Shown here: piece by piece, positions 25,791-63,795 of the stretch
How positions within the stretch are numbered: the stretch's first letter is position 1
Layout: each line of letters begins with the position of its first letter
Translations under genes and position numbers: made by a program
Assembly: GCA_965637545.1 (NCBI GenBank)
Contig: OZ281500.1
Span: 4,216,001 to 4,280,000 of the forward strand
DNA from: Phallusia mammillata
Taxonomy: Eukaryota
Length of the DNA: 64,000 nt
Direction: 5' to 3'
The notes under the pieces: generated by a model
What the model was told of the DNA's origin: nothing
What the model saw: the letters and a program-made list of their open reading frames with translations, nothing else
Database searches by the model: none

Positions 25791-26272
25791 AGACTTTTGG
25801 TTGTTGAAGAATTGTTGTAAATTTTAGTAAACAACTTGGTGCTATTGTGACTGTGTTCTAAACACGTTAACGTAAACATAAACATTATAATAGTTTAGAG
25901 TCGCTAAACTCGCTATGTTTAGATTTAGATCGTTTTATAAAGTATGCGAGGATTTCAAACAAATATTAGACAGATAACCAACACATTTTCCAAGTTGTAA
26001 AGATTGTGGACAATGTTATGTTACAATAGTATTAAAAAAGCTCGTTAAAAGGTATTTATTAAGTTTTTTCTGAAGTTCTTGGTAATTATATATGTATTTC
26101 ATGTTAATAAAAAGGCTTGTGTGTAATTTTGGTAAATTTCTTAAAAGTCATGTTTGTTATGGGTTTTGTGATTAATATGTGAAAAACGTTAACAATATGG
26201 GTTGTATGTTCAGAAACAGATTTTAGCTACTTTACTAGCTTAGGAGTTTATGTTTTAATTGAATTTTCAAAA

Positions 26273-26887
26273 ATGTCGAACCCAGCACCAGCTACTCAAC
26301 CTGCTCAAGCACCAGCAGCAGCAGCACCTACAGTCAAGCAGGGCAGAGGAATTGTTAAGCAGGTAAGACTATTTCTGTACATATTTGTCACAAAGAGTTT
26401 TAATTGGTCCCATCCAAAGTTTCACCCAGTTTCACTCATTTTTTTGTGAGCTTCAGTCACAAAACGCTTCATAATATGGGTTTAGTCATGACCACCAATT
26501 GTATTGTATTAATTTTGAAACCGTGCATGAAAATGGTACATAGGAATATGAAAACACTACACTAGCGCCACGGAATCGGGAAACAGCTGCAAAAACCTCG
26601 CGGTTGAAAATACGCCAATGTCAAAAATTTTACAAAAAAGGACATAATATTGTCAGACGCAGCAGCCGCACCCTTAAAAAGACTACGTTATAAACCAGGG
26701 GTGGCCAACCTTCTACATACCATTCGCCAACTTTTTAACATACTGTGTTGGATGCGCCATAAATGTCTCGTAACCCCACCTTCTATGACTACTTCTTGTA
26801 TATAGAGAGAAAGAGAAAGAAACAACTTTTGCATGAGAAGGATAGTAATAAGAAATAAGAACTATTAAGTAAAAAATAATTTTGATA

Positions 26888-26923
<36 letters not shown>

Positions 26924-29900: not shown

Positions 29901-32900
29901 GACGACAAGGAATTTACCGGGAAAGTAATTCAGATCGTGAACGCCGACGCTATCGCGATTAAAACAGCATCTGGTGAAGTAAAAACTATTCATTTGTCCA
30001 GCGTTCGACCTCCAAGGTAATTACGATGTTTTGGCCTTTTAGTTTTATAATCTGTAAGACAACTGTTCGCATTTAATTTTTTGAGTGATAAGCATTCAAA
30101 AAGCATTCAGCCTGATTTCCGTAAACTTCAAAAACACATCCGTATATAGTAGAGGATTTTTTAACTTATCTACAATGGCAAACTGCGCAGCCGAATCTTA
30201 AAAATGCTTCTACAATGTAAAAGCATTAATCCATCCAACAGAACTACTGTTTGTTGAAGGTAACAGGCTAAAAATCCATGACTCAGTTATTTTATAGATG
30301 CCACTACTGGGCATAAACTACAGAGGAAACTGGCTCACCATGGCCGCACTGATGAGTCCTTATAGGTCAAATAGGTGGTCTATTTGAACCGCTTTTAAAC
30401 TCATTTTTTCACCACATTTAAGGTATGACGACGTAACGTTTAAGATGGACAAGGACTCCGCCCCGGAACAAGGAAAAGGCAAAGGGCGCCCTCTATACGA
30501 TGTCCCATACATGTTCGAGGCTCGGGAGTTTTTGCGAAAGAAACTTATTGGCAAGAAGGTTAGTTTGAATAAATCGACAGTCATTCTCACCTATTATATT
30601 TTTAAAGTGATATGGTATCACGATATTTTCCCGTAATATTCTGATATTTTATCGTGATATTATTTGTCATGATGTTTTCCTCTGATATTTCTTCACAATG
30701 TTTCACCACGATTTTTTTCGATTTTTTACTATGATATATTTTCGTGAAACGTGGAATTCTTTCACAGGTGAATGTGAGTCTTGATTACATGAAACCGTCA
30801 AGTGCTGCGACTGAAACTTTGGCAGCTTTTCCCGAAAGAACTTGTGCAACGGTCCGTAGTGCTGGAATGTAAGTTTTATTTATCACTCTTCAGCATTTAA
30901 AGAAAATAACTCTAAATATACTATGCAGCTAAAACATTTTGTTTGTAATTGTGATTTACCTCAAAAAATTACCATTATGTCCAGTGCGTCAGGAACACTA
31001 AAAAAATCATAAAAATGAGCTTAAATATGAACGTAAATCAGAAAATAATTGAGATGAACATAAATTCATAACTCAGCCCTGAAGCGTCTATGCACACCAG
31101 CGATCACGGCACACTCCTATATAAATCACAGTGAATGCTCGGTGAGCGGCTGATTCGGTATGGTACCTTTAATGGGCCTGGCGTACTGTGATCTGTCAGA
31201 AAATAGGTACAGTTTATGACAAATATCTGGAAACAACATTACATTTAATAGTGTAAGTTTTCAATAATGCAACAGAAAATATATTAAATTATCAATAGTA
31301 TATCAAAAAAAAAAATTTGTAAGCATTTTGCTGTGTTGCTTGTTTTGCATTAAAATTTGCATATTTGCTTTTAGAAACATCGCCGAAGCGTTGGTGAGCA
31401 AGGGTCTCGTCAAAGTTGTACGTCACAGACAAGATGATGACCAGCGTTCTGCGCATTACGACGATCTACTTGCTGCAGAACAGAGGTAAGTTGAACAGCT
31501 AGCTATATCTGATTATGCCAGCTTTGCTATCCTAATAGTACCTGGCACAAGTGGGTCATGCTTGGCACTGTATTGCGCTTTTAATGCTTATGCCCTCCGC
31601 CGAAAATTCAATATGATGCTGAACGCAAGATCATTTTTTAGCATTATATGGTTGCAAGTAAAAAGTCTTAGTCTTAGGCCTCCTAAGCTAAGCCACTATA
31701 AACACATTTTTTAAAACTGCCTCGTTTTATGTTTTTCACGAGGTCAAAATCAATTTTTCAGATTTAAACAAAGGTAAATGCGCTTGCTGATTTATTGTTA
31801 CCACTTACTGAAACGTTTCATATCTCAACCATTACCTCAAAATTTTTGGTGCTGGGTCAAACATCTACAGCATTTTCCCATTTCTTTTATTTAATATATA
31901 TTTTTGTGGGAATAAACTGGAGACAAAGTTGCCCTACTCGTTGTCCTCAAAGTTCCATGCACAAGTTTATCAGAACTTAAACACTTCTGTTTGATATAGA
32001 GCTATTAAAACCGGCAAGGGCGTGAACAGTAAGAAGGAACCTCCCATCCACCGCGTTGCTGACGTATCTGGTGACGTCACCAAATCGAAGCAGTTTCTCC
32101 CCTTTTTGCAAAGAGCCGGAAAGTGAGTTCAGTATTCATAATAAATTTAGTTGATTGTTTAACAGATGGTTTGTAAGTTAGCAAAATCACAATATCAAAT
32201 AAGCAACGTGATCACCTTTGTTTCGAATTATTTTCTAATTATAAAAAAGAAAAAAGAAGAAATAAATTGTAAACACTAAAATTTGGGAATTACTTTTTGC
32301 CTCTAAGTTATTGTAAGGTAAAAAAAAACTTATAAAAATAAAAAAACTTAACGATAAAAAAACTTATTTTTGATCTAATTTCTAAACATTAGCTAATATT
32401 ATTTAGAACCTTTAGAATTTAAGTATTTTAAGCCCTTCGTTGTTTCACGGGTTGCTTTTACTTTCGTTTGGTCAAAAATAAATTCAAACCGAACGAAAAT
32501 CCAATCTCAATGTAACAGGTCGGAAGCAGTGGTGGAATACGTCTTCGGTGGATCACGACTCAAGCTCTACATTCCAAGAGAAACTTGTCTCATCACCTTC
32601 CTATTGGCAGGTTGGTTTGTCACGTGATCTGTTTGTCCATTTCAATCTATCGGATAAGTGGTTATCAAAATTGGGTGCTCGAATCGGATCTAGGGTTGCG
32701 TGAAAAATTATTTTTTTTTTAGTTTTTTAACTAATGCTCTGCTCACAACTCCAATTTGCCCATTTTTTTTGTGGTTAACCTAGATGTGCGATTACCGGGA
32801 TTTTCGTTAGATTTTCGTTGAGTTTTTGTGGCAAAAAACAGAATTAGCGATAAACCGCAACCGTCTGGTACTTACAATGTAAAAGATATCAACAGCGCAA

Positions 32901-35900
32901 CACTGTGGTATCTATTGCACTTACAGCATGCAATGAAAATTTCTCGTATACGTCCCTTTTTAGTATTGATGTTTCTCTCCACAGCTCATAGAGCTACTGA
33001 TGTTAAAACGCATCAAAATGAGCCATATGTTTTTTTTTACAATCTTTTCGATATAAACCATATTGAAGTGTTATTTTAAGCAGGTTTTGGGCAATTGCTA
33101 AACCAGTGTGACTAAAAAAGTAGAAAGTTTGTCTACTTATTTTACGTAACCGGGTTATTTATTCCCTTTAGGCATCGATTGTCCGCGCAGAGCAAGGAAC
33201 GGAGCTCAAGGTTTGATGGAGGGCGATCCTTTTGCTGAGGAAGCGCTGCTATTGACCAAGGAGTATTGTATGCACAGAGAGGTAGGATTGGCATTATAAA
33301 ATCGCTGCAATAGAACCTGAAATTTTGATAAGGCTGTTTGTAGTAAATGTTTCGACGTAGAGGTTTAAAAAGCAGCAATGTTTTATACTGACTGCTGATT
33401 CGTTTTGTTATTCTAGGTATTTCGTTTCGTGGTTACAACCCTAAACAATGTAGTTTTTGATATTCGGCTTGTATCTTTCCTTTAGGAATATTTAAGATGT
33501 TGAATTGTGTATCGTAAGTTACCTTCAAAACTATAAGTCAAGAGCAGTTGTGGTTGGTCATAATGAAACTATATAAACCTGGACTCAAAAATCGCGGATC
33601 TCGTTGGTTTTATTTGTTCGTGACAAAGGCGAAAAAAACAAAATAACAACTACTAGCAATTATATTTTCGTGCGGAACACAAGCATTTATGACATACACG
33701 CACGAAAATGTATCTTCAGCAACACAATATTTCATTGCCTAAAGTGTTTCTTTGCTTTCCAAAAACCTCAATCCTTCTATCTTCCGCACCATCCCGTGTA
33801 TAACGTCATATTCGTCACAAGCGTCATTGTGACGTCATATTTCGGTCTCCTTGTGGTTCAGTAGTCCTTCGAGGCTTCGCATGCGAATCGGTATCTTCCT
33901 TTTTGGCGGATCAACCAATCTGACACTCCTGCGTCGTTGCGTGGCAACACCTGTAGTTTGAAGTTGTTACTAGGTGGCGCTATGTGCAAAATATCACTTT
34001 TTATACCTGTGCTAAAATCCACATCACCTACACCCGCAATGTCTCCATCAACACTTGGGTAGCTCATGAAAGACGACTTCTTCAAGTTGTCACACGACCT
34101 ATGGTGAACCCGACACATGGTAACGTCTTGTTGATTGTTGCTGTGGTTACCGTTGCCAGGCCTCTGTTCGATATAGCTGCGCCGTTGCATGGCAACCTGC
34201 TGGCATGACGACGCGATGTTGCTAAGCAATTGCTTAGGAACCGGGGATACCCCTGAACCGCGACCGGGCAGAGTCTGCACCCCATAGTTGTCGACAGGTG
34301 GCGCTCTCGGCCGATTGTTTCTCGTCGTTTGAAACTTTAGCTCCTCTGGAGGTGGCGGGAGGACTTGCACTGGGTTTTCCGATATTGGGGCGAAAACCGG
34401 TTTTGCTGCGTACGACAACGACGGTTTCCACGACAACGGAACGCTGATGTCAGTGCTCGGGGTCCTTGCTGGCGTTGTATTAGCGGATGTTGAACTAAAA
34501 GACATTTCATTTTAAGTTAAAAACACATGCTGTATATTGCTTGGCTTTATCGTAAAGTTTACATCACTACTTGCGTGTGTGATGCACATATATCACTTAC
34601 CAAGTTATGTTCGCTGCATTAAGTGCGGAATTTTGCAACAGCGTGTCCAGTCGTTTCTGTGCGTTCCGGTCCAGTACGTTTGCATCAATCCGTGTGTCAC
34701 GTGGTAAGCTTTGGTCTGAATCTGCATCAAGTGACCAACAATGCGTTAAATTTCAAAAAAGAGTTAACAAAACAAGTTGTTCTTTACATTTTACAATATA
34801 GCTTCTGTGTCTTAAGGAAGAGTTTGGTATATAAAGGTATTCTGTGTTTTATGAAATGACAAAATTAAGAGTCCGTTATTTAACAAATTTGTCGTTCAAC
34901 TGGTGTAATGCTAAACAAAATACTAGTTGTTTCAAGAACTTGTATTTTTGGTGACGTTTCGCCCACCAAAACGGTAGGGCTTCTTCAGAGCAATGAATGT
35001 TTTTTTGCGAGCACACAAGCGCAGCGGAATTTAAAAGTCCTTCACAAGAAAGCGTGGTGAATGTGTTCATGATGTCCGTTTGCTATATTCATTTTACTTA
35101 CCTACTGACTTGTGTCTCCTGCTTCCTCGGTTTTGGTTGTAGTTTCTGTGACGTAACTTGTAGAAAATGATGAGTAACGCTGCTGCTAAGAGTGTAATGC
35201 CCACAAAACAACCCACTATGATCTTCGTGGTTTCCATTACCTTAAAAAAGTGAAAATAACTTTTGTGACCTTTATAGCTTAAATGGGAACCTACTGCAGA
35301 TTGGCAACAAAATTTAATAGTAAGGGCGCGTGGTTTTGATAACACTGAATAATTTATCATTGAGGTTATTATTAACGGGGTCACAATTAGTGGGACAACT
35401 GGTCGTTGTGAGGTGTTTTTTTCACAAATAATGTCTTTTCACTGAAGCCTTTTTCCTCCACCAAAAAGAAAACATTTACCAACTATATTGGTTGTTTTAA
35501 AAAAACCAACCTGGTCCGCTGTATCTTGGGAACTGGTTATGACTGGTTGTTTGAAAATTGGTACAATCGACTTGGTCTCTTCATTTATGCTGGTTGTCTT
35601 TGTAGTAGTGGTTTGTGTTCGGGATGGTGTGAAATAAGCCGGTCTTGGAGTGTATGTAAACTACAAATTTACAAAGCGTAAGTTTTTTGGCATTGTTTTA
35701 TCAAATGATAGTACTGTTAGATTTCCTTTAATTTTACACTTGTTTATCACATTATTCGACATTTTTAATTTTGAAAAAGTAAAATTTGAAATTATTTGCC
35801 TTTCGCTCACCCATTTATTGGTATTTGTTGCTACTGTTGGAGGTGGGTTTTGGTTCCTCGATTTTATGACCGTGGTCTCGGTGGTTAGCACTGACGTAAA

Positions 35901-38900
35901 CATTCTGACGTCATTAGATTGCGTCACATTAAGAAAAATAGTTGTCTCTGCAACGTCAGTACCGTTCCGCGTCACTGCACATCGGTAAATCCCCGTATCT
36001 TTCATTGTGACGTAAGTAAAGTTAAGGGATCCTGAAATAAAATGAAATTATGAGTAACGGTATTTCTTATAGAATCCATAACCAACCCATCAGTTGGTAA
36101 ATGTAATGAACTGCATCATTTTTTAATGCCTAATGCTACCAACGTTTTATTAATAGCTGTTGTGGTTATGACTACAAAGTCACAATTCATTACGTTCTAT
36201 CATATAACACGTCTAAAACAATCACGTCACAGCCAATCAAAGCAAACACCTTTGCCGCCAAACATTGCTCACGCGATTGCCATGACAACGATCGGTTTTG
36301 GATCAATAAATAATTATCTGCGTATTTGCCCACAAATTTGCATCACCGTGAGCAAATGGGGCAGCATGGCAATGGCTTAAAATCTCGCAATCAATAAACA
36401 CTTGGCGTGACGCAAGATCGATTGACGTCATTTGTTGTGGTTTTGGGGAAAAACAAACGTGACAAAGCGTTCGTACAGTGCAACTTTATTTTCGTATCCG
36501 GCATTTCGTATTTGAATCTAGAGATATGCTGTTTTGAAAATTATGTTGCAAATTAATGTTAATAACAAGAAAGAGACATGCCAATATATTTGTAAAAAAC
36601 GTAACCTTTCGACATTCTTTATGTCGTTCTTGTCAGTATCTTTAAAACCGTGAATTGTGTATCTAGTGTCAATGGCATTGATTTCCGACAAGTGTTATTT
36701 AAATTTAAATAGATAACAAAAAAAAAACGGTTGGTAGAAGTAAACTGAGGGACTAAAGTTACTTTTGGGAGTAAAAAAATCCGTTATCTCACCATTTCCA
36801 AGCGGTTTAATTCGCACTTCAAACCTCCCATGTCTGATTGGACTTCCGTCTGGTCTGTACCATTTCACTTGTACTTGCTTCGCTTTGCGTTTGACCGACG
36901 GCGCAGTGGGACATGGAATCTTCACTGAATCGCCCACTGAAACGTTCATACTTGCTGCTGAAGCTGTGAACAAAAATCAACACTTTGGGTTCTTACTGAT
37001 TCAAATTTATCAGAAAATTGTGATTGAAAGTGTCTCAGCCATCATATTAAAGTTACAAATACATAAAAAATTTATGAACGTTTTTTATGTATTCCTTAAC
37101 ATGAAAAGTGCGAAAATATTGGTTACTGGTGTGCAGTAAGATTAAAATATTCAGCTTTTGAATTAGGTTGCGTTTAAAATGCAAAATACATAGTCTTAAT
37201 TGTTAAAAAAACACAGCTTGTCTTCGGATAGAGGGACGCCCAGTGCAAAACAAAATTTGAACAATATTCTGAAACAAAATTGATTGCTTCTTTATCTTTT
37301 TCGCGTGGCACAACATCAGAAAACTCTTGATCAATATGTGGTGCGATTTTCCACCCCTTCATCTTCAGGCGCCAAAGGAAAACACTTCAATCATAGTGAC
37401 AGTACAAACACGGTCGACCACAGCGCCTGATCTTGTCCATCGATTCGCGATCAGCTCTAATGCAATTCTCGCGTTGCCTACGTTTTCTGGCAACAACGCT
37501 TACTCTCACACCGTTTGACCACTTACCGGCGTTAACGATGCGCGCGGCGCATGGCGGGTTTTGAACCCGTGTGAAGTTAACCAGAGGCATACGCCTGTAC
37601 ATCAGTGGGTATTTGCATCGCCCGCAACCCTCCCCTGAGCAAATGTTGCTTGCTTCAAGATATCTGTTGAGATAAAAACACTGTTAAATTTATGAACACC
37701 ATACACGGTTTTTGATCACATAACCTCCTTCCTTGTTTGTTTCTGTATTACAAAACCACCGAAAATTCAATGCCTTTCTCACATTTAGATAATAAACTGA
37801 AAATTAAAAAACACAAGAAAAACCTGAAACACGAACTCAAATGTAAGTCTTTGGATTGTCTATTTGTAGGCAGATTTTTTGCTTTTCATAAATATTTCTG
37901 TAAAATTTGGTGTTAGTGAGCTAGAAAAAAGCAGTCCTGGTGGCCCCCAAAAAACACTAGCGCGATCTAGGCCAATCATCATCGATTTTCACATAAACGT
38001 CATTGATCTTGCAATACATTTGTTTATCGATCGGTGTACCTTCTCAAATATTTTCCAGACAAACGTATAGAATGCATGGTTGTCTGCTTGTATAACACCA
38101 TCAATACCTTGCAAATTGAAGTAGGTCGCAGTTGCAAAACCATGGGTTTCCCTCAAATTGCATTCTTCTGCTGTTCGGTAGCAAATCAGGATAAATCGTT
38201 GTCAAGTTGTTTGATGCAAGGCTGAGGCTCTATAAAACGAACAAAGAATGCCCGTCCATCATTAATGCAACCATTAACTCTTACACACACACACACCCAA
38301 AAAACTTTTACATACACCCCTCTTACATGTATTTTTGAAACAAAAACTATTCAAACCTTAAAAAAATAAAATCGATTATTGTCATATAGTGTCTGTCGAA
38401 GCAAGATATTGGTCTTTATAGACACTATTTTTGTTAGTGTTCTGTGTAGCACCGTATTGAAAACACCGTTTGAAACTATCAGGGGGTAATTAAAGTTTGA
38501 CCATAAACCAATGTAAATACTGTAGCTGTGACTGTTCCAAAAATCATTTTGAAGAGCATGTTTGCAATTGGTTGGGGTATTCTTAATAGACGGCATTGTT
38601 TAGAACTTGTGTAGGACCGTAAGCATCTCTTGGATAGCCTTTACAAGTGGTGGATACTGTTACACACGCCAGGTGTAATTTCGTACTTCACGCGTAAATT
38701 ATTCAAGGTTTAATGGAAATTTGGGCTTTGTTCCAACTTTTGTGGTGGATCCGAAGGTGGCATACCGAACTTAAAGAATTGATAAAGAACACAGATAAAG
38801 AATTAAAGCATCATCTTTGCAAAATGCGAGTTCGGATATGGCCCGTTTGTGTTTAACTGGAGGCAACTGCTCAGGCCCATATAGCGTTTACTGAAGTATT

Positions 38901-41900
38901 TAATAGTTCATGAATAATAAATGCAAATCCAAGGAAGGTTTTTGTTTTGCTATGATATGATCAATTATAGTGGACTGTAATAAAAATAACAATATTTTCT
39001 CTTTCTTGACTCTACGCCTTTAACAAAGTCTGACTGATAACTTTTTTTGAATTTACTTGATATTTTTGTTTATGTTTGCCACCAACCATTTATTCTATGG
39101 AAGCTGTTTATAGTTTAGTTCAGCCTGTTTGAAAAATAAAACATATAGTGGTTATATACAAGTGGTCATACATGTATACTAGTCATACATATAAAATAGC
39201 CGTTCCCCACTTTGTCGCCATCGCCAAAAGTTTTTTAAAAGTTGCTCTGCATCGCCATTTTTTCAATGCAAATTACAACGCTCTTGTTGGTTTAATCATC
39301 CGACCATTACAATCGTAATCTCATAGAATCAATACGTGACAAATGTTTTAACCGAAATACTGGCTTGTATACTTATGAATGATGGAAACGTTTCGAAATC
39401 CTGATTGATTTACTTCACTTCTGAAACTTGTCTTGAAAAAATTAACTTGGAATCTTAACAAATCTTTTAAGATATCGGGACGTAACTATTGGTCCTTCAA
39501 AGACCAGGTATCCATCTTAATTTCAAATTAGCATCTCTGTTATTGGCCTAAATGCCAGTACATTTGACCGTTGCGTGGCGTCATTGTCCAGAATTGTTTG
39601 TCAATAGTATAAAACTTACATCAAGTGACGTAAGATCACTGAAAGCTTTTTCCTCGATGGTTCTGACGTCACAATAAGCGAGCGAGAGTTGAACGAGTCG
39701 TTCCATTCCGGTAAACGAACCGGCTCGCACCCGCTGTATCTTGTTCGACGAAAGATCGAGAACTTGTAAATTCACTAGCGACCTCATTGAAGGGATTTCC
39801 CGCAACTGACACGAATTCATTCGCAGTTTCTAGAAAGAAGTTTTCAAAAGATACACCGTTGGTACTTAACAGATGAAATGGACAAAGTTTGACCAAAAAT
39901 ATAAAAACATCAAGCCAATAAATGATAATTAAGCCGCTGACTGTGCACGCTTTTTCTATTCTAAAATGTTTCATCAGTGCAGCTGGTGTCAAGACTTAGG
40001 TGCATTGACTAGTGTAACCACATTATGACACACCAAGCACTTTTTTTAAATTGATGAAGTATGTATGACATTTTATCCTGAAGTGTCGTTTACTGTCAAG
40101 TCATGTCGTCACCTGCACTGATGAGACAAAGTAGGTGAAAATAGTGTGAACAGTCTGCAGTTCAGCCGAAAACTCAATTCCCCAATAAACCAACGCAAAG
40201 TATTGTAAGTGTTGATGTTTTTTTAATTGGGGTTTGTAAGATTTACTTTGTTGGTTTCTCCCTTTTCGGAAACAAGTATCCGGTCCGGTAAAACCATAAT
40301 GTAAAAAGACGTTTTACAAATCTTTGGCATGAATACCTTAAATAAAATGCAGGGACCCTAATACGTTTCTACAATTTTGCACTGTTTATTTTCAAACTTC
40401 CTCTACAGGCTTTTGCACTCAAACTTTGGCTTACTTCGTTGTGTGGTTAAGGGCGGATGGAAACTTTTATGCAGGGGATTAAATCCCATGACAAACAAAA
40501 CCAATAATATAGGCTCTGTTAAATAAAACAAAAATAGATGTCTTTACTTACCCTGCTACGCAACAAAAGCAATCCTAAAATTTAACATCAATCTTTTTAT
40601 GTAGGTGCAAAAGTTTGCGAAAAGAATTTGTTTTCTTTGTCATAACCAATTCATCAAAATTACTAGATATTCTTTCAGAGTTACGCGCAATAAACAACCG
40701 GAGTATTGTTTTTGCCCTCTTAAAACAAAATGTGGATCGCCTAAGGTGTTTTTATCCATTAACCAAACATTTTTTTTAGTAACAAGCACTTTTTCCTATC
40801 TTATATCCTTGCATTTAATGCTACATTGGAATAGAATTGCCACAGCTTAATTACGCATTCAGGAAATGGGACGTCCTCGGCAAAGAGGCAATTATCCCTT
40901 TGTGGCGATTTCTTCAATTGCTGCGTTGCACAAGCGGTGCAGTAGTGGGATAGCGGTCGATAAACGTGCACTAGCTATTCATGAAACATTGTGGTAAATC
41001 GATCCCAATTAAAGGCTTCAATCGCGCGGATCGACAACCATGGGTTGTGATTTTAACAGTTTTATTTGTCTTTAGAGTTTAATTTTTTGCCAAGTCTATT
41101 TCAATGATAGAGAACCTATGTTGCAAGTATATAGTGCATGTAAGCATGCAGTACATTAACGGGCATATTTTTTTAGGCTAAAACTAACAAAACTCTTGTT
41201 TCTATAAATTATTTTCTAATTTTTTACTATTAAATGTGATGACGAGAATCTTTTAGTCACCAATAAGATCAAAATGAGCCTCTAGCACACCTTAATCTCA
41301 TAGTGATGCCAAAAAATATGTAATATCTCAAAAACTGATATTTTATTGTACACTTAACATTCGTGGAATTACTGAGTTTGCACGGTTTTATGTTTTTTTT
41401 TGCAACAACGCCCAATGTAAGAAACACCTATGGGGCCTAAATAATATATAGAACTGTCTGCTAACTTGTGTGTAGTCAAACCTCATTTGTCGGTTGTGTA
41501 GACAACATTTTGTTAATTGGTTCTCATCCAAGCAATAATTGCAACGTCGGTTTATCTGCATAGTATGAGATTTGGTTCAGGCTTTTCAACCTCACCGTTT
41601 ACCTTTTTACAGTTTTACATAAAAAGGTTTGTCATGTCTGTGGGCGGAATGTTGGATGGATATAACTGGTTGATTCTGTTTGGTCTAGGGTTTTGTTTGA
41701 TGTGAAAAAAGCAATTATTAGCTTGCTACTGCAGGAGTTGATTTTACACTTTGTGGTAATGTGTAAGATAACCTTCGTACCGTCTGTTGAATTTTACCGT
41801 ACGCCCAGGTTAAGAAGCGCTCGTTTGGCCTTTAGTTTGTTTAATCGGTTGAAAAAAACGAACGTTCAATTGTGTTCTTCAAGCAACGTAACTGAGACAA

Positions 41901-44900
41901 AGTTTGTTAAATAACTTTTACAACATTTTTCACATACCTCTAGTTTTTGCAAGCCGCTGAACGCTTGGTTCGAAACATAAGTTAATTCCCTTAGTTCCCC
42001 GATGTCTAAAGTTCTTAACGTTCTTCGCCCTTCAATGAAGTCGTACGCAAGTAGTTGTGTGATCGGGTTGTTGCGAAGCGACAGATATTCGAGATTTCCA
42101 AGCCTTGCCAAAGCCACACGCGGCACTCCAGTGATTCTGTTGCCAGATAAATCCAATCTTCGTAGCTTTTTCAAGTCCGAAAACGAGCTGCTCTGTAAAG
42201 TTGTATAGTTTGATATAGTGAATTGTTGTAAGGTTCGGTTGTATGGGCTGCCATTTTGTGACAATACCCATACACTGCAAGTCGTGGTTTCAAAGGTTTC
42301 ATTAGGCGTTATGTTTTGTACGACAAAATATGCCAAGTCCATTAAAATATGGCTACCTCATAAATTTGTTCTGTAAATGGACTGTTTTGCTGCAACGACT
42401 TTTAGTACTCGCCAATTTTTGAACCAAAATTTTAACATGATTATTCTGGCCTGTATTGTACTAACAATCAACATGCTTGATTTATTATACGTTTTGGTTT
42501 AGTCACATCAATCTTGACACTAACGAACATATCCGTATGTGATGTTCATAAACCACTATTATTTGAAGAATTTAACAATACCACCCTACAAGACCACTTG
42601 TGCTTGTTACACACAGCTAAAAATTGATTAGTAACAAGACATGTCCAATCCGATTTACAAACTTTCATCGATCTTCTCAAACAACACGATTGATTGGAAT
42701 TAATTATTTTCGTGTTTTACGAATTAACCCTGAAGACCTCCTAATCCCTCGATCTTTAGATCTTTTTTCACAACATGTCGTGAGGTCGCCACTATGTCCC
42801 TATAGGTCTTGTTTTTCGGTCAAAGGGTTAAGTTTAATTTGAAGCTTTGTTTTTTTTGTGTGTGTGATTAGATTTGGGGCTTTCAATCCAGACAGTTTAA
42901 ATAATAGCCGGTTTTCATCGGGTCCAAGTGACTTATTTTACTAAATAAACAACGAATTGCATATTTTGGCACATTGCACGTACGATTTCTGTGACTTGTT
43001 TTAAGTCACGTACATATTTATTTGAACCACCGAGGGGAAAGCTATCATTTCCTTTTGTTAATCCCATTCAGTCAAGAAACATAATCAATGTTACAAACAT
43101 TAGAATCTTATTCTCTGTATCATAATCACATACTCTCGCATACAAAAAAAAAACACAAACAATAGTTCTCGCTTACGGGGACTTCCACGATGACGTTGTT
43201 GCTCAAGTCGAGCGTGACGAGGTTGGGAATTTGCTTGAAGACATTTCGTCGCAATTCACGAATGTTGTTATTTCCTAATGTAAGTCGCTGTGTAGATGTT
43301 GGAAACAGCGGCGGTAATGTCCGAAGTCCATATCCCTCACAATTTACCTGTGAAGGCAAACAACAATAATATTGTGGTATAATTATTGGTATTTGACTGT
43401 AGATTTAAATGCAGAAAACGGTTATTTGTGGTATTCTGTGATAAACCTTTTTAGGCTCTTTTTTGTTGAGGTGGCTTTTCTATTCTCTTGCGTGTTTAAA
43501 TACACCATTAACTAAGCAAGCGTTTTTGAACGTTATATGGATGCTTCGTAACCATTTACAGATTAAACAGTAACAAGCTGAAATAATATGGCATGTTTTA
43601 GGATGCTCACAGCCTTATCTTTCACAGACTAATGTTTTAGTCCATGTACTCAAGGTAAAGAAAGCACGTTCAGTCAGTTTGAAACCTAGCGATGATGATT
43701 AAATCAGCAATTATTTAAACTAATAAACGTCTAAACAAAGTATACTTTTTTCACCATTCAAATGTTTATTTTAGTTTGCTAAGCAAAATATGAACAACTT
43801 AATGTGGGCTTTAAAACATGCGGATTGTTAGCTTGTTATAAGGTTAATACGACTGGACGTGTTGAACAAACGGAGGTTTTAATTAACGCTGTTTTGTCCA
43901 ACCGTGTTCGATAATCTGATCGATTTTATTTTAATTCTTTAACCAATGGTACTATGTCAGACATGTTGCCGGAATATATGTACAAAACAAAATCCCCAAT
44001 TCCAAGTGAAAAAATTAATTTGTTTTAACTCCTGGCTGACTTTAGTTTAATTTAGAGCTTGCGTTTTGCACGCATGGAAAAAATATTCTCGCAACATTAT
44101 TAAGATGCGCAATATTCCAGTAATGCATATTTTTATTGCCAAATTCCGCTTCATGAACGCTGTCGTTATGCCGCAGACGTTGGGTGTGCCACAGGGTTCT
44201 TCTTTATTACCCTTACGCTGAAGACGGAGGTAATTGCAGCATTACGACAACGCCAGTTTCCAATTGGCTCACATCAATAATTCACTTGCTCGATTTAACG
44301 TTCTTGCAAAAGTTCCCCTGCGTGACTCAGGTGGGCTTCTGCACCCGCAAATTGAAACTTGTCAAACATTAGTCCCTTTAATGTTCCCGCATACCTGCTT
44401 CGAGGCGTCTGCGGCGGAGGCCAAGTTGAGGCCATCTCGCTAAAACCGTTGGGTCTCTTTATGCGTTGACGCGCATCGTAAAGTATATGCATTGGATATC
44501 GTTTATTTTTGAATTGTTTAAACTACAAAGTCTTACCTAGGTACTACAAGACATAATATTGTTGTTCTTGTCGCTTTTGTACTTTGCGTTATCACGCAGT
44601 TTAGTTTCAAAGTAGTCACACCTATGCTTGATACGCGAGCCAACCAAAATCGCTTTATTTTAAGCAAACAAAGTTGCTTTTGAATAAACTATTCCTCACA
44701 GTGTTGAATGACAAAAGTACCTAGTTCCACAACCGTTAATTTTGTTCAGGTGGTAAAAAAAAACATTTTCAATAATAACTTGAAGAAATTATGATACCCT
44801 AGGCCTATTATAGGAATGGCTTTGATTCAAAGATAAGTGTTTCGTGGTCACTGGTCTGCATAGACTATAAACAAACTTGAAGAAATATTGACTTTGCAAT

Positions 44901-47900
44901 TCTGTTAAGTTGCAGCCATCTGGGTACTTCTCACTCTAGCCGAATCTTAGTAACATCCTTTAACATATTAAACAACACAGAAATATATCTTACCGTGTCA
45001 TCGTAACATTTGCAATCGGTCGGGCACTTGATTGACTGTGCTTCCACTTGTACACAATTATCCAAATAGAAACACCAATACGTTGCCATGGATACTATCA
45101 GTAGGCGTCGGAATCTGTTAAGCCCTCTCTTTTCTGCTCGGTCTCGATTTTGAACTGGTGCATGTTCTCTCGTCTTCGATCGCCAAGCTTTTTTCTTCGA
45201 GGCGGCCATGTTCTCTCGAGCGTAAAAGGCACGTGATTTTGTCGTGTGCTCTGATTGGCTGTTGCGTCCGTTTGTTGAAATGGTTGCAATGTTCAAAAAA
45301 TTGACGGAAGCAAATTATTTCATGTTTCGAAAAAGATGACTTTGACGTGGCGTTCGTTCTGTGGATGATTTATACTTGCCACTAGATGTTATGTCAGTCT
45401 TTTTGACATAGATTAGTTTTTTTGCGTTTTTTTACAGTGGGTATTAAACTTCTTTTGATAACCTTAAAGCATCTGCAGAAATACAAAATAATGTTCCAAA
45501 AGTACACCTTAGGTTTGTGCATAATGAAACTGAATGCCTCAAATTACCACTAAAATGCACTTCATTGTAAAAACTCTGTCCACTAAGAAATTTACAACGC
45601 CGTTAGTCGTCGCAAGGGAGCGCGTATTTTTACATCCTCCTCCAGACGCACGCATGGATTTATTTAACAATGTATTATTCATGACGTGAAGCGTTAGGAA
45701 AGCTCTGCCAATTGCCACCGTCGCATGCTTAAGCCATGACGTCAATTTTGTTTACCTACCCTAGATGGTAGTAGAACTAAACAAAACAGTTACAACAGCG
45801 TTCAATGTTAATGTAAACTCTTGTTTATTTGATATTATCAATGGTTACCAAGCTGTAAATACACAAAGCAGATGGTAAAATAACAATTTTCGGTTTCTGA
45901 TTTTTGTCATTGCACGCCTATTAATGTCTTACTTAAAAGTTTATTAAAAGAGATATTTCACGTTTTCAAGGAGTTGTAATGGTAATAAGTCCCGTTCTTA
46001 CAAAAAGGTAAAAAAATCACCCGTTTATATGCTGTATATACCTACAATCGCTATGACACATCGAATTTTTCGGGCAATTGAAACTAAATTCAGCGCATTT
46101 TTTCTGATAAGGAGATCTAACCTTAATCTCCATGTATCTCATCAATGATCTCGCGTTTAATTTCTACGAACCAACGCTATGTATATTCCGAGATCGGCGT
46201 TTGGAGAGTTAAGTGGCGCGCAAAGACTGGAAGATATCAATTATTTATCTCGATCAATGCACCACAATAAACAAGCTACCTCCAGGCACCATTTGCGCGC
46301 AGTGGTGACGAACTACGCTATTCCATTTCGCAGTGGGATTCCAAGGAAAGAGCAATTATGCGACTGGACAAACATTATAATCCCGTTATAATGCCCTGTG
46401 GTCGATTTTTTGAACTCTGTGTTCGCACATGGTATAATACCTTTGATTACGATTTTACTTTGAAAACTGAAAAAAATAGTTTTATTTCCGTTTGGTGAAT
46501 TTCCAAATTAGTTTCTAAAGCATTTTGTTGAGTCTAAAACGTTTCATATACGACTATCAGTGTAAGATTTATAAGGAATGTAATGGTTCAACTTAATTTA
46601 AACATAGAGATTTAATTTATTTTACAACGTTTCGTCAAGTGCTCATGCTGTCAACAATAATGCAATTCGATCAGTTGCACCCATTTAGATCAAGTTAAAA
46701 AAGTTATTGTGCTGTAAAGGCGCTAATGCAAACAGATAGCAGTTTTAATCTAAATTTCCCATTTCTACACCTCAAATTTCAAACTTGCTATTGCACAACG
46801 GTATAAATTACGTCACCAGGTTACGTCACCGTAGCGAAAACAAAACAGATGAATATTTCTCTGTTTCCTGTTGCGCGGTTGTTTACATCCGGGACTGGGT
46901 AAATAATTTAGACTCAGTTTCCCCATAAGCCTCTACAATCATTCTTGCCGTAAAAGCGTCTTCCATCGACCAACACAAATGCCAACCAGTGCCATTCTGC
47001 AACCAATCTACATCTTAAACACTTATCATGACTCATCAAATAGTCCAGGGACTCGTTTTTGTCTTTTACATTTTTTAGAACGCTTTATCGGGGCTAGTCA
47101 GTGCCAAAAGTAGATATAAAGCAGATAAATGTTGTTTGCCTTTATGTATATTTCATTTCTAAGGCACAATCGACAATGGACATTGTATGTACATTACAGT
47201 ACAAAAACTTAAAATTCATTACCAACATTTTAAATTGTCATGAATTGCAACTCACATAATGAAAGTTTTATGTGTATAATCCAAAACGTTTAATCGTCTG
47301 TTAGCTAATAGCGATTATATGGTAGCCTATTAACATAACCATACCACACGCCTTTTCTTTTCAAACTTGGACAATTTCAAGTTTTCAACTAATTATTCTT
47401 TTTAAATAGTCTCAAATCAATCTGTTCTTTACTACATATCAGAACACAAGCATTGCTTTATATCAAATTTTACGCGCATGTACAGCTTACGTTATAGATT
47501 CATCTTTCTTTGTCTACCATGGCATACTCTTCTCTGCCATTCAACTTTCCCATATCTTTATTGGTTAGCCAAAGATATTGATCGCCTTTGCAAAGCCCCT
47601 CTGGATTTCAGACGGCTGAAAAATAACTCAACTCCTCTCTGCTTGCTCTGCATATTATGCTTGAAGACATACATTTCTAAGTTAAACAACGTTAGAACTA
47701 TGTTTATGTTGCTGCTCGCAACAATGAACGCATTTGTTGCAATGGATAAAGATTATGCTAGACTATCTGAAGACTTAAGTGCAAAAAGTTGCATTGTATT
47801 GTGTTGTACACGCGCATATTTCTAGCCATTCAAACAAGCCATTTACTCTGTGTATTTTCAGACTTTTAGTCTTGCAGTATTAGAAATCTGTAGCCATCAC

Positions 47901-50900
47901 AGGGCAGAATGTTTCAAAATTTCAATTTTAAATTACCGTTTCTCTACCCAACCAGGCCAAACAGTTGGCGATTTTTTGTACCAAAACTACCCTACAAAAG
48001 TCTTGCACTCTCAGCAAATAATGTGCACTGCTAAAACAAAACCTTACTGAATTACTAATCGCATCACTAGTTAATTTACTAAAGGCCGCATCACTAGTTA
48101 ATAAAAAACAAATATAGCCACCGGTGCGTATGTTTACTTGCGCATGTATAAGATAAAAATATTGTATCCCCCTGCGCTAATTTTAAACCAGTTTCAAAAT
48201 CTGTATACCTGACCAAAACTACTTTATCGATGTAATTTCTGCAATACATGTATTATGTTACACGTCTGCGCATTCACATAAATAACAGCCATGGCCGTAA
48301 ATGTGTAGACCTGTTCTAGGTGCAACGTGATTGCAACTGTACGGTTAACTTTCTGTTGCTGTTCAAACCAATAAGATTTACTTGAAAAAACACCTTTTTC
48401 TGTCACAAAAGAGTTAATTTAGTGGCATACAAAAACAATGCACAAAAGTCAAAAAAAAAACTTTCCTGATGTGCAGCCTACCTTTAAACCAACCACCTAA
48501 TACCTGTGGTGGCGACCCTCACACTTTATGACCCGAGCAAGCACTCAAGGCCGAAAAAAAAACACTTGTCTTGTAAATCTCGGCTCGTCTTCGATTAATC
48601 AATTCCTAAACGTGGCCATGATCGTCAACCGTAGTCCGCCGCAAAACGAAATCCTTCTACTCGATGTGGTAACCATGGCCTCACTCGAGTAGATCTTTTC
48701 CTTGTAAGAAGCACTGTCGCTGTGATTTCCATAGGGAAATGGTGTGACCGGGCCCGCCAAAAAAATCGTTAAACCCCTACTGGCCTTTGGCAGATGATTT
48801 GGCAAGGTTGTGATGCGCTTTTGTGTTCACTTGCTCCTCGCTGTCTGCAAGTGCAACGAACACTCACTGTGTGTTGATTGACTCGGAGCGCGAAGTCAAA
48901 AATCTCCGATCAGTACAAATGTTATCTGGTGCAACGCAATGGATTTAAGATTGATATTTAACCCAAAATCCCACGACGGCCTATGTAAGAAAAGGTCAGC
49001 AATGACCTATATATGTTAGGTCCCTACGGTGAATCCAAAAACATAATAAAGGTTAATTTAAATTTGTTGGTTTATTTTGGTATTTAAAAACGCTGTAATA
49101 GATCTCCACCAAACAGTTTTTTGTCCCAAAACAAATTATTGCTCCACGAAAACACGTTAATCACTACATTCTTTCTAGTAGTATATGTGTCAAGTATCTT
49201 TGTCTTTATAAAATAATTTTAAAGGGTGCATTTTATACTCAAAAAGTGCCAAAACTTGTTGCCTGTGCATTATTCAATTTTCCTCAGAAGCAATATTTAG
49301 TATTTGTTTTGCTTGTTACGAAATTTTAAGTGAAGCATTTTGTACAGTGATAAGTTCCAGACCTACAAATTGTGTTTATCTAAAAGTGTAGATCATTCTT
49401 TTTCCGTCCAAGTGTCTGTTGACTAAATGAAACCACTTAGTATAACCATTGACAAATTACCCTTCGCTGTTATCGCCTTTTACCGCGCGCAAAAGTTGGT
49501 GTTAAACTAAGAAAAGCTGTTAGACCAGACGTTATAATTGACTTCGAAATGTAATGAAACTAAATACTCTTTTCGAGTTTCTATCTTTTGCATATTTGTA
49601 TTCACACTTGTCATTGACTTTAATGTTAGGTTTACTTCGTTTAAAAGCGTACAATCAGACCTTCTTTAGCAGTGCAAACTGATAACTAACGCAAAACGGT
49701 AATAGTTATTGGTCTACTTCAAATGTAAGACGCTGTGAATAGTTTTGCTTAAGTGATATTTACAAAGATCATGGGAAATTTTGGTCGATGCTTTTACTAA
49801 GAACAGATGAGAAGTTACGTCCGAACTGAAACAATTTGTTCAGCTCTTTGCCATTCTAGTTATCTCTATCAGCTTCTCCTGTGCTAACTGGGTCTTGCTT
49901 TTCAATCAACCACCTCTAAAAGCCTGCACCAAATGGCTTACTCCCAACTCTACCATGCGTGGTTAAAAAAACAACACAAAAAGTAGAGATTCAGACTTAA
50001 TTTCAACTAAATTGGAAGGGTAGCGACCCAATTGACTCCCCTATCGATTAGGTTGTAGCCTTGTCGAAGGGACACAAGTATTCAAATCCTATTAGAGGGT
50101 TTAGTCCAGATTTACTGTCTAAATAGCAAGAGTGATGTCTCACCAATGCCTTGTACTATCTACTTTCCCTTTCGTTACACATGTTAAACATCATGAAAAT
50201 TCAATTTAGAATCAATAACATCAAAACTTACCCAAAAGTAATCCTGTAACTTGTTTGGCAAGCGCACGCGCACAAAGTAAAAATCTAAACCCATGCACAA
50301 CTACCCCCCCCTCAATCGTTCTGACGTCACGCTTTGGGTGGGGGGGGGGGAGGTCGAAGTAGTTTGGCGAACCATTAACTTTCAGTAATGCTGTGACGTT
50401 GATTCGCTGTGACTGTTAAATAATTAAGAGACTTGGCAAAAATCTTGCGCTGGCTTTTTAGGTGCCTTAAAAACACCGCAAACGCGATCAGTTGTTATCT
50501 TACCATATAAAGGTCTGATCCAAATGTTAATTCCAAGAAAAAAACACTACATACATCAGTCACGTATCGCAAAGTAGGGTTACGTGTCTTTTTATGATAC
50601 GTTGCATTCGTGCGCTAACTTTGCATTGAATATATTTGTTCATTATGTACTTTAAATCAACAAGCTTAAACTAAGTGCAAATTAGAATTATAAATGAACT
50701 TATTCCTTAAGTGCACTACCATAAAAACCACATACGTTATTGTCTATCTTCTAAATTTCCATTCCCTAGATGTACTAATTTTCTACTTATTACCAACATT
50801 TATAACCGTAACACACTTAAACTGCAAGGTTCTGACTTAAATCGTAAGACAAAAGCAAAACAAAACCTGACAACATACTCGACTCCGTTTCGCACCGGTA

Positions 50901-63400: not shown

Positions 63401-63795
63401 CTTAGCCTTTAAAATAATATGTTATGATGTTTTTTCCTAATACATTGTTTGGGGTCTTTGGTGTGTACTTTTTTTCTAAACTTAAGTGTGTGTGGACAGA
63501 TTGACCGGTGTCTGTTCAATGAGATTGAGAAATGGCACAGAGAGCTTCACAATTCCCCGGAGAAATCCACGCCAGATGGGAGATGTAATTGCTCAAGGGG
63601 CATTGAGGACACTGATGGAAAGACACTGTCTGATTGCCTTGCTATCACCCAATCTTCATTCATGGGTCGTGTGTACCAAGAAGATATCGCCCTGTGCTTG
63701 ATGTTCCAAAATGACTCACTGTCGCAAAATGTCTCCAAATGCATTCATAACAACTCCCTATCAGTGGAGCTAATTTCGAATCCAGTTGTGCTACA
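60441..63795 (+). CDS. RAB3IP: Rab3A-interacting protein / Rabin8 (Sec2-domain Rab GEF), 5' part; the gene continues beyond the window
   Basis: Exons 60441-60584, 60870-61043, 61417-61534, 62905-63056, 63500-63795 (donor gtaag at 63796). Sec2 coiled coil [43 protein letters not shown]|[20 protein letters not shown], then RHKRNSS and [17 protein letters not shown]. Cannot separate RAB3IP from RAB3IL1; the start codon is inferred. Confidence 0.88.
61994..62460. repeat. Three tandem ~158-bp units in RAB3IP intron 3, possibly the core of a non-autonomous Helentron/DINE-like element
   Basis: Units start near 61994, 62153 and 62311 (CCCCRAAGTTTGTCYGACTCGTTTTT...GATTTGG.T.AAATTTACACAGA...). They are preceded by a 9-bp inverted repeat GTCCCCTTC/GAAGGGGAC (61916-61936) and a T-rich low-complexity stretch. 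Confidence 0.8.

What the first reader, a model, noticed from the sequence alone, without database searches (positions are those of the whole stretch)
35102..45209. Invertebrate-chordate netrin-G ligand (NGL) orthologue with an intron-rich structure
Seen: nine LRRs collinear repeat-for-repeat with remembered human LRRC4, including the irregular [13 protein letters not shown] repeat and the Cys-containing LRMNSCQL repeat; CGRC in the LRRCT; and a near-identical TM segment, all split over 12 coding exons. Known: NGL-1/2/3 and netrin-Gs are generally described as vertebrate synaptic organisers, vertebrate NGL ORFs are almost intronless, and NGL-3 binds LAR-family RPTPs. Inference: the family arose before vertebrates, possibly as a LAR-RPTP ligand before netrin-G pairing. 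Either vertebrates lost the introns or tunicates gained them.
Basis: partly seen in the sequence, partly recalled or inferred. Interest (0 to 1): 0.7.

Follow-up and report, generated by a model that had tools for sequence, protein, structure and literature searches.

The report
Tunicate NGL gene nested in SND1
A sea-squirt-type genome carries an expressed 13-exon gene for a netrin-G-ligand (LRRC4-type) synaptic adhesion protein that lies backwards inside an intron of the SND1 gene, just as LRRC4 does in mammals, so this "vertebrate" synapse organiser and its odd genomic address are probably older than vertebrates.

Summary
I model 13 coding exons (45209 down to 33835) and 838 aa. The architecture is LRRNT, nine LRRs, LRRCT, Ig, Ser/Thr stalk, TM and a 250-aa tail ending in ETEI.

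Spliced contigs from two studies confirm every junction from exon 4 to exon 13.

LINGO-1 comes far behind.

The gene is also nested antisense in a 20-kb intron of the SND1 orthologue. Published work describes the same arrangement for LRRC4 in human, mouse and rat.

No full-length reciprocal search or tree could be run, because a spliced protein has no reference and exon-sized queries fall outside the search tool's length window. The TM likeness and the CGRC equivalence remain untested.

A Ciona gene is already called Lrrc4c, so this is a new member of a known kind with a notable conserved synteny.

The parts
44994..45209 (-). Coding exon 1: first in-frame ATG at 45209 (alternative ATG at 45089), weak signal peptide, start of the LRRNT (CPTDCKC). 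Donor GTAAGA, phase 0.
   Evidence: There is an in-frame stop upstream at 45316-45318. This exon was not covered by the reads laid.
43177..43347 (-). Coding exon 2: end of the LRRNT, LRR1 and the first half of LRR2.
   Evidence: Pfam LRR_8. Aligns to NGL-3 chain 3zyn 21-73.
41938..42192 (-). Coding exon 3: second half of LRR2 through LRR5, including the irregular 26-residue [13 protein letters not shown] repeat.
   Evidence: The sub-piece 41938-42072 finds NGL-3, NGL-1 and NGL-2 as its only significant PDB hits.
39620..39829 (-). Coding exon 4: LRR6 (22 residues, Cys-containing [10 protein letters not shown]), LRR7 and LRR8.
   Evidence: Top PDB hits are NGL-1 and NGL-3. The donor junction 39620->38229 appears in spliced contigs.
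38108..38229 (-). Coding exon 5: LRR9 and the start of the LRRCT (NPWFCNC).
   Evidence: Both junctions appear in spliced contigs of runs X5 and X9.
37527..37663 (-). Coding exon 6: rest of the LRRCT, including CGRC.
   Evidence: No PDB hit for this piece.
36793..36963 (-). Coding exon 7: first half of the Ig domain.
   Evidence: Weak Pfam V-set/ig match. NGL-1 and NGL-3 chains hit at 349-394 and 322-365.
35811..36031 (-). Coding exon 8: second half of the Ig domain (DTGIYRC) and the start of the Ser/Thr-rich stalk.
   Evidence: The LRRC4 Ig domain 2dl9 and chains 3zyi, 3zyo and 3zyj are among the hits.
35511..35660 (-). Coding exon 9: Ser/Thr/Pro-rich stalk.
   Evidence: The weak donor GTTGGT is confirmed by spliced contigs.
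35102..35240 (-). Coding exon 10: juxtamembrane VMETTK, TM helix and basic stop-transfer stretch.
   Evidence: Hydrophobicity peak at aa 556-580.
34601..34721 (-). Coding exon 11 (cytoplasmic).
   Evidence: Found only through the spliced contigs of X5 and X9. It restores the frame between exons 10 and 12.
34007..34494 (-). Coding exon 12 (cytoplasmic, 162 aa, no known domain).
   Evidence: No Pfam match. No relatives within the searchable length window.
33835..33950 (-). Coding exon 13, after a 56-nt intron. It ends ...NHKETEI followed by TGA (33837-33835). The 3' UTR continues below 33830.
   Evidence: The joint 33950/34007 is present in X5 and X9.
33282..53293 (+). Host intron of the SND1 orthologue (about 20 kb, phase 0, between ...HRE and VMVEVE...). 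It contains the whole NGL-like gene on the opposite strand.
33172..33281 (+). SND1 exon immediately upstream of the host intron (IDCPRRARN...DPFAEEA...HRE).
   Evidence: It fills human SND1 chain 3bdl positions 240-277, between the two aligned exons.
53294..53482 (+). SND1 exon immediately downstream of the host intron (SNase domain).
   Evidence: 3bdl 278-336, E 1.9e-26. Pfam SNase 1.9e-8. Boundaries.
32519..32610 (+). SND1 exon ([32 protein letters not shown]).
   Evidence: 3bdl 205-239, E 5.8e-13. Boundaries.

Best explanation
This is the single, pre-duplication tunicate orthologue of the vertebrate NGL/LRRC4 family (LRRC4, LRRC4B, LRRC4C). It encodes a type I membrane protein. Its nine-LRR horseshoe plus Ig domain faces the extracellular space and most likely binds a presynaptic partner: a netrin-G-type protein, a LAR-type phosphatase, or both. 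That binding is inferred, not shown. Its cytoplasmic tail ends in E-T-E-I, a class I PDZ ligand that most likely tethers it to DLG/PSD-95-type scaffolds, also inferred. The gene is transcribed and spliced from 13 coding exons. It lies antisense inside an intron of SND1, and mammalian LRRC4 still occupies that kind of address. The SND1/NGL nested pair therefore probably predates the tunicate-vertebrate split, and LRRC4 is the paralogue that kept the ancestral location.
For: Shown:
- A complete open reading frame of 838 aa over 13 GT..AG exons.
- All nine junctions from exon 4 to exon 13 are present in intron-free contigs of two runs from different studies (X5 and X9, tables 5 and 8).
- Pfam LRR and Ig matches.
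- Nine LRRs with an NGL-like irregular length pattern, 26 then 22 residues at LRR5 and LRR6.
- The LRR4-5 sub-piece finds only NGL-3, NGL-1 and NGL-2 significantly, with LINGO-1 four or more orders of magnitude weaker.
- The LRR6-7 sub-piece has NGL-1 and NGL-3 as best hits. Their best stretch (24.8 and 24.7 bits) is about twice the best stretch of each other chain whose alignment was printed (12.3 bits or less).
- Offsets to NGL chains are constant from the LRRNT to LRR7 and roughly constant on to the Ig domain.
- NGL chains are the only proteins listed for both Ig half-domains, in collinear order.
- The C-terminus is ETEI. Zebrafish Lrrc4ba ends in the PDZ site -ETQI (PMC6739339).
- The flanking plus-strand exons are SND1: 3bdl hits at E 1.9e-26 and 5.8e-13, and Pfam SNase and TUDOR. 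The NGL-like gene lies in the intron between them.
- LRRC4 is nested antisense in SND1 in human, mouse and rat (PMC6297716; PMC9789969). It is listed as a different-strand nested pair also present in coelacanth and/or zebrafish (PMC3933685).
- A Ciona gene is already called Lrrc4c (PMC12705688).
Against: - No full-length reciprocal best-hit search or phylogeny could be run. Family assignment rests on PDB chains only, so families with no solved structure were not compared.
- Over whole LRR exons, LGR4/5 and TLRs score as well as or better than NGLs.
- The second half of the LRRCT found no NGL chain.
- The Ig half-domain hits to NGLs are individually weak (E 0.005 to 0.3).
- The TM likeness is untested.
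- Exons 1-3 and their junctions are not covered by the reads laid.
- Whether the host SND1 intron is the homologous intron in vertebrates is unknown.
- Ligand binding and PDZ binding are inferred only.
Confidence: 0.85

Rival explanations
1. It belongs to another LRR-Ig-TM family (LINGO-, AMIGO-, LRFN/SALM-, LRRC24- or Kekkon-like), or to a tunicate-specific LRR-Ig lineage. On this view the NGL-like features are convergent or shared ancestral traits of LRR-Ig proteins.
For: - Whole-exon LRR comparisons do not single out NGLs. LGR4, TLR3/13 and designed LRR proteins score as high or higher.
- LINGO-1 is also found by the irregular sub-piece, at E 0.01.
- No tree was made.
- Some other LRR-Ig families also carry PDZ-binding tails (own knowledge: SALMs, some Kekkons).
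Against: - The two irregular repeats match NGL chains best by a wide margin and at the equivalent positions.
- The repeat number (nine) and the offsets are those of NGLs.
- There is no FN3 domain between Ig and TM, unlike SALM or LRRN.
- The tail ends E-T-x-I, as in NGLs.
- The gene lies antisense in SND1 like LRRC4. A member of another family would have to be there by coincidence.
Confidence: 0.08
2. One reading: the ancestral NGL was a LAR-RPTP ligand (NGL-3-like), and netrin-G pairing arose only in vertebrates.
For: - NGL-3 binds LAR-family RPTPs and not netrin-Gs (PMC5938020).
- LAR-type RPTPs are ancient, and one is noted elsewhere in this genome (unchecked notes s1-403085 and s1-403080).
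- Many papers call netrin-Gs vertebrate-specific (for example PMC4706652 and PMC4000137).
Against: - A single NTNG precursor gene is reported in Ciona intestinalis (bioRxiv 10.1101/034413).
- A review places netrin-Gs in chordates, not only in vertebrates (PMC10084454).
- Another first-stage note reports a complete netrin-G-type GPI-anchored gene in this same genome (s1-408712, unchecked). Ligand and receptor therefore probably co-existed before vertebrates.
- In the PDB comparisons the tunicate protein is no closer to NGL-3 than to NGL-1.
Confidence: 0.15
3. The nesting inside SND1 is an assembly artefact or an independent insertion in the tunicate lineage, not conserved synteny.
For: - Only one assembly window was examined.
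- The junctions between the SND1 exons and the NGL-like gene were not checked with reads.
- The homologous-intron question is open.
Against: - The window has no N runs.
- The SND1 exons on both sides are in order and on one strand, and they fit contiguous positions 205-239, 240-277 and 278-336 of human SND1.
- The nested gene has the same antisense orientation as in mammals.
- An independent insertion of the same gene family into the same host gene in the same orientation is improbable.
Confidence: 0.05

Closest known systems
LRRC4 / NGL-2 (vertebrates)
   Same: - Same domain order: LRRNT, nine LRRs, LRRCT, one Ig, stalk, TM and a cytoplasmic tail.
- The irregular LRR5 and LRR6 match at equivalent positions (3zyi is found by both sub-pieces).
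- The LRRC4 Ig domain 2dl9 is hit by exon 8.
- LRRC4 is nested antisense in an SND1 intron, as this gene is.
   Different: - The vertebrate coding sequence lies in essentially one exon (own knowledge, not tested here). This gene has 13 coding exons.
- The tail here is about 250 aa with no detectable similarity to anything searchable, and it ends ETEI, not ETQI.
- There is a one-residue insertion in LRR4.
- The LRRCT spacing differs: CSGEGCGRC here. I recall CCGRC in LRRC4, which is memory only.
LRRC4C / NGL-1 and LRRC4B / NGL-3 (solved ectodomains 3zyj, 3zyn, 3zyo)
   Same: - These are the best PDB matches to the irregular repeats (E 3.6e-7 to 1.3e-6; 1.4e-11 and 6.3e-11).
- The alignment with NGL-1 over LRR6-7 is 37 residues long without gaps, about 49% identical by my count.
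- They are collinear with this protein through the Ig domain.
   Different: - Overall LRR identity is modest, so whole-exon scores do not exceed those of LGR4 or TLRs.
- These paralogues are not nested in SND1 (own knowledge).
- Their ligand specificity (netrin-G1 or LAR) is unknown for the tunicate protein.
Ciona gene model named Lrrc4c
   Same: A tunicate gene that Ciona researchers already name after LRRC4C (PMC12705688). It is presumably the orthologue of this gene.
   Different: That paper gives only the name, and calls it GPCR-coding. I found no published analysis of its structure, synteny or family membership. Its sequence could not be fetched here, so orthology to this gene is untested.
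LINGO-1 (2id5, 4oqt)
   Same: It is an LRR-Ig-TM neuronal protein. It is the only other LRR-Ig family found by the irregular LRR4-5 sub-piece (E 0.01).
   Different: It has twelve LRRs and no PDZ-type C-terminus (own knowledge). Its match is much weaker, and it is absent from the printed lists (best 60) for the LRR6-7 sub-piece and for both Ig halves.

Membership tests
NGL / LRRC4 family | Domain order LRRNT - nine LRRs - LRRCT - one Ig - TM, with no FN3 domain | tested here: met
   Spliced model, Pfam LRR and Ig matches, repeat parse of nine LRRs and a single TM peak. Nothing lies between Ig and TM except a Ser/Thr-rich stalk.
NGL / LRRC4 family | Irregular LRR5 (LDxGELxxLxYxS, longer) followed by a short Cys-containing LRR6 (xMxxCxLxxIP) at the same positions | tested here: met
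   NGL-3, NGL-1 and NGL-2 are the only significant PDB hits for LRR4-5. NGL-1 and NGL-3 are the top hits for LRR6-7, with a best stretch about twice that of each other chain whose alignment was printed. Offsets are constant.
NGL / LRRC4 family | C-terminal class I PDZ-binding motif (E-T-Q-I in vertebrates) | tested here: met
   The protein ends ETEI. The last exon and its 56-nt intron are confirmed by spliced contigs from two studies. The -ETQI of Lrrc4ba is cited as a PDZ site in PMC6739339. Actual PDZ binding was not tested.
NGL / LRRC4 family | Reciprocal best hit and monophyly with LRRC4/4B/4C in a tree that includes other LRR-Ig families | not testable with these tools
   The spliced protein has no reference. 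Exon-sized queries are outside the 0.55-1.75x length window. The one exhaustive search was swamped by giant LRR proteins.
NGL / LRRC4 family | Conserved TM and juxtamembrane segment | not testable with these tools
A TM segment is present. No NGL sequence that covers the TM was obtainable.
NGL / LRRC4 family | LRRCT with the CC/CGxRC cysteine cluster | tested here: inconclusive
   CGRC is present at aa 336-339, but phmmer with exon 6 found no NGL chain at E<=10.
NGL / LRRC4 family | Binds netrin-G and/or LAR-family RPTPs | not testable with these tools
   This needs binding assays or complex modelling with full-length sequences.
LRRC4 locus (orthology by synteny) | Nested on the opposite strand inside an intron of SND1 | tested here: met
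   SND1 exons lie on the plus strand on both sides. The mammalian arrangement is described in PMC6297716, PMC9789969 and PMC3933685. Whether it is the homologous intron was not tested.
LINGO family | Twelve LRRs, and LINGO as the best match | tested here: not met
   There are nine LRRs. LINGO-1 reaches E 0.01 against 3.6e-7 for NGL-3, and it is absent from the printed lists of the other piece searches.
LRFN/SALM and LRRN families | FN3 domain between Ig and TM | tested here: not met
   There is no FN3 match in Pfam. The 86 residues between Ig and TM are a Ser/Thr-rich stalk (34% S/T).

The most novel reading that the evidence does not exclude
The whole netrin-G/NGL trans-synaptic system, and the antisense nesting of the NGL gene inside SND1, were already in place in the common ancestor of tunicates and vertebrates. 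That ancestral nested gene was intron-rich. On this reading, the intronless coding regions of all three vertebrate NGL genes came from intron loss in place before the two rounds of genome duplication, not from a retrogene landing in SND1.
Probability: 0.4. Interest if true: 0.65.

Novelty: new member of a known kind. Interest (0 to 1): 0.5.

Why it matters
NGLs and netrin-Gs are usually presented as vertebrate inventions that helped diversify synapses. A 2022 review says the distribution of NGLs across animals has yet to be studied (PMC10084454).

An expressed tunicate NGL with the family's signature repeats, a PDZ-type tail and the same SND1-nested address dates the family to before the tunicate-vertebrate split. 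It also identifies LRRC4 as the paralogue that kept the ancestral locus.

Together with the reported Ciona netrin-G precursor, this makes the original ligand question testable in an animal with a tiny, fully mapped larval nervous system.

The result also gives a rare example of a nested antisense gene pair apparently kept since the tunicate-vertebrate split. That bears on whether host and nested gene regulate each other: in mouse, Snd1 and Lrrc4 change in opposite directions (PMC9789969).

Tried and rejected
- **Exhaustive phmmer with exon 3 against 1.84 billion representatives.** The best 150 were all giant multi-LRR proteins whose many repeats add up.
- **Word-indexed protein search, three times.** I used the 217-aa cytoplasmic segment (no hits), the TM exon as a region (one candidate, no hit) and exon 3 as a region (three short bacterial or unnamed LRR proteins). 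Full-length relatives are outside the 0.55-1.75x length window of exon-sized queries, and a spliced protein cannot be given by reference. I did not type the 838-aa model into any tool, as the rules require. No reciprocal search and no tree were therefore possible.
- **PDB searches with whole LRR exons.** These are not discriminating, because TLRs, LGR4/5 and designed LRR proteins score higher by summed repeats.
- **PDB search with exon 6, the LRRCT.** Only a zinc-finger chance hit.
- **Ig half-exons.** NGL hits are present but individually weak.
- **A PDB chain id given to protein comparison.** Not accepted.
- **Metagenome scan with exon 3.** The one locus I opened (L004) encodes a bacterial LRR protein. 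The other four loci were not opened.
- **Paper search for NGL TM peptide strings.** Nothing found.
- **Paper searches for published invertebrate NGL analyses.** None found beyond the Ciona gene name.
- **My first model.** It joined exon 10 directly to exon 12 and failed on frame. The reads revealed exon 11.

Full report
**What is there.** The finding lies on the minus strand of an AT-rich window (36-41% GC, no N runs). Stop-free segments with LRR, Ig and TM content run from about 45.2 kb down to 33.8 kb. I read the splice sites base by base and then laid Logan contigs of four public runs on 33830-39829.

Two runs from different studies (X5, X9) contain intron-free contigs. Their joints all have CT..AC ends on the plus strand, that is, GT..AG on the minus strand. 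They define exons 39829-39620, 38229-38108, 37663-37527, 36963-36793, 36031-35811, 35660-35511, 35240-35102, 34721-34601, 34494-34007 and 33950 onwards.

One of these, 34721-34601, I had not predicted. It resolves the frame conflict between the TM exon and the large cytoplasmic exon. A 56-nt intron near the 3' end shifts the frame, so the protein ends ...NHKETEI rather than in the longer genomic ORF.

With three upstream exons defined by canonical sites (45209-44994, 43347-43177, 42192-41938), the model has 13 coding exons and 838 aa. Runs X1 and X2 gave only unspliced contigs here. These are DNA or pre-mRNA and say nothing either way.

Exons 1-3 were outside the single read-laying run allowed. 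Indirect support exists. The X9 contig extends 887 nt upstream of exon 4, enough for the 642 nt of exons 1-3 plus a UTR. The exon 2/3 junction as modelled also gives an alignment to NGL-3 with an unchanged offset (see below).

**Check of the observation.** The protein has an LRRNT and nine LRRs of 24, 24, 24, 24, 26, 22, 24, 24 and 22 residues. It continues with an LRRCT containing CGRC, one Ig domain split over two exons, an 86-residue stalk that is 34% Ser/Thr, one strong TM segment and a tail of about 250 residues.

It therefore misses three coding exons. It counts 12 exons where I find 10 in that span and 13 in all.

**Family assignment by sequence.** Full LRR exons are uninformative against the PDB. 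TLR3, TLR13, LGR4/5 and designed LRR proteins score as high as NGLs, because their many repeats add up. The two irregular repeats are different.

- The 45-residue piece covering LRR4-5 (window 41938-42072) finds only ten PDB sequences at E<=1. The first four are LRRC4B (twice), LRRC4C and LRRC4 (E 3.6e-7 to 7.9e-5). Each is aligned at the equivalent repeat with one single-residue gap. TLR13 (1.8e-4, no single significant stretch) and LINGO-1 (0.01) follow.
- The 40-residue piece covering LRR6-7 (window 39710-39829) has LRRC4C and LRRC4B as best hits. Their best single stretches score 24.8 and 24.7 bits, against 12.3 or less in the three other chains whose alignments were printed. The alignment to NGL-1 (NLAMCNLREIPNL... 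against [13 protein letters not shown]...) is ungapped over 37 residues.

The offset between my numbering and chain 3zyn is 54 at the last LRRNT cysteine, 54 at LRR4 and 55 at LRR6. There is therefore no repeat-unit insertion or deletion.

Exon 4 as a whole continues on 3zyj to residue 260. The two Ig half-exons hit NGL chains at 349-394 and 399-433. Those hits are weak one by one (E 0.005-0.3). NGL chains are nevertheless the only proteins present in both lists, and they appear in the right order.

The second half of the LRRCT found no NGL chain. The TM likeness could not be tested at all.

**The tail.** The RNA-supported C-terminus E-T-E-I is a class I PDZ-ligand pattern. Zebrafish Lrrc4ba ends in -ETQI, and that paper removed it as the PDZ-binding site (PMC6739339).

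**The genomic address.** Scanning the rest of the window showed a series of plus-strand exons on both sides of the gene that read as SND1 (Tudor-SN).

- The exon at 32519-32610 aligns to human SND1 chain 3bdl 205-239 (E 5.8e-13).
- An exon at 33172-33281 encodes IDCPRRARN...DPFAEEA...HRE, which fills positions 240-277.
- The exon at 53294-53482 aligns to 278-336 (E 1.9e-26).
- Further exons carry Pfam SNase and TUDOR matches.

The NGL-like gene therefore lies, on the opposite strand, wholly inside the 20-kb phase-0 intron 33282-53293 of SND1.

In human, mouse and rat, LRRC4 is hosted by SND1 in antisense orientation (PMC6297716; PMC9789969). [quoted passage not shown]

The same gene family in the same host gene in the same orientation is very unlikely to arise twice. 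I take it as independent evidence of orthology, and as evidence that LRRC4 kept the ancestral locus after the vertebrate duplications. I could not establish whether the host intron is the homologous one.

**What could not be done.** The test that would settle membership is a full-length reciprocal search and a tree. It was out of reach.

- A spliced protein has no reference, and long sequences may not be typed.
- Exon-sized queries are outside the length window of the indexed search.
- The one exhaustive search returned only giant LRR proteins.
- The metagenome scan turned up nothing useful; the one locus I opened is bacterial.

Families without a solved structure were therefore never compared.

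**How it most likely works.** By analogy with vertebrate NGLs (PMC5938020), the LRR-Ig ectodomain on the postsynaptic or target cell binds a presynaptic partner. The ETEI tail recruits DLG/PSD-95-type PDZ scaffolds. Both steps are inferred.

The evidence found here points the other way.

- A single NTNG precursor is reported in Ciona (bioRxiv 10.1101/034413).
- A review places netrin-Gs in chordates (PMC10084454).
- An unchecked note of this scan reports a netrin-G-type gene in this very genome (s1-408712).
- LAR-type genes are noted in this genome too (s1-403085 and s1-403080).

Both candidate partners probably co-exist with this NGL. Which one it binds is open.

**Introns.** All twelve introns are canonical. 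The four in the LRRNT and LRR region (introns 1-4) are phase 0, and two of them fall exactly on repeat boundaries (LRR5/6 and LRR8/9). Whether vertebrates lost these introns or tunicates gained them needs an outgroup. The conserved nesting does make a simple 'retrogene landed in SND1 in vertebrates' story less likely.

**Novelty and verdict.** A Ciona gene is already named Lrrc4c in the literature, although it is only mentioned there and is called a GPCR (PMC12705688). The bare existence of a tunicate LRRC4-like gene is therefore not new. I found no published analysis of invertebrate NGLs, and the 2022 review says the question is unstudied.

I rate this as a new member of a known kind. My confidence that it is an NGL-family orthologue is 0.85, and interest is moderate.

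Noticed in passing
window 26183-33281 and 53294-~56700, + strand: A complete-looking SND1 (Tudor-SN) orthologue. Exon 1 starts near 26183 (MSNPAP...). All other introns seen are short, while the one that hosts the NGL-like gene is about 20 kb.
   Followed up: partly
window 34830-35029 (intron between coding exons 10 and 11): A high-copy repeat. Summed contig depth reaches about 200 in run X1 (43-111 in the other three), against roughly 6-18 on the neighbouring bins. Many contigs from all four runs end here with different loose ends, and one shows an opposite-strand joint. It is probably a short interspersed or foldback element.
   Followed up: no
window ~3400-11050, - strand: Exons with LDL-receptor class A repeats (Pfam PF00057) are followed by rhodopsin-type 7TM segments (weak 7tm_1 match, an NPxxY-like NPIIYS). 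This looks like an LDLa-containing GPCR gene.
   Followed up: partly
window 60855-63796, + strand: Exons with a Sec2p GEF domain and a Rabin8-like C-terminal domain (Pfam). This looks like a Rab3IP/Rabin8-type exchange factor gene downstream of SND1.
   Followed up: partly
window 37687 (intron 5 of the NGL-like gene): Runs X1 and X2 carry an 11-nt insertion (ATTAATAACCT) relative to the window. There are also many single-base differences in introns, which points to a polymorphic population or a different strain.
   Followed up: no
window 33948-34007: The last intron is only 56 nt. If retained, it would give an alternative C-terminus (...SKDY) without the PDZ motif. Only unspliced, DNA-like contigs (X1, X2) cover it unspliced, so there is no evidence for such an isoform.
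   Followed up: partly
literature (PMC12705688): The Ciona gene called Lrrc4c is described there as 'GPCR-coding'. If it is the orthologue of this gene, it is an LRR-Ig adhesion protein and not a GPCR.
   Followed up: no
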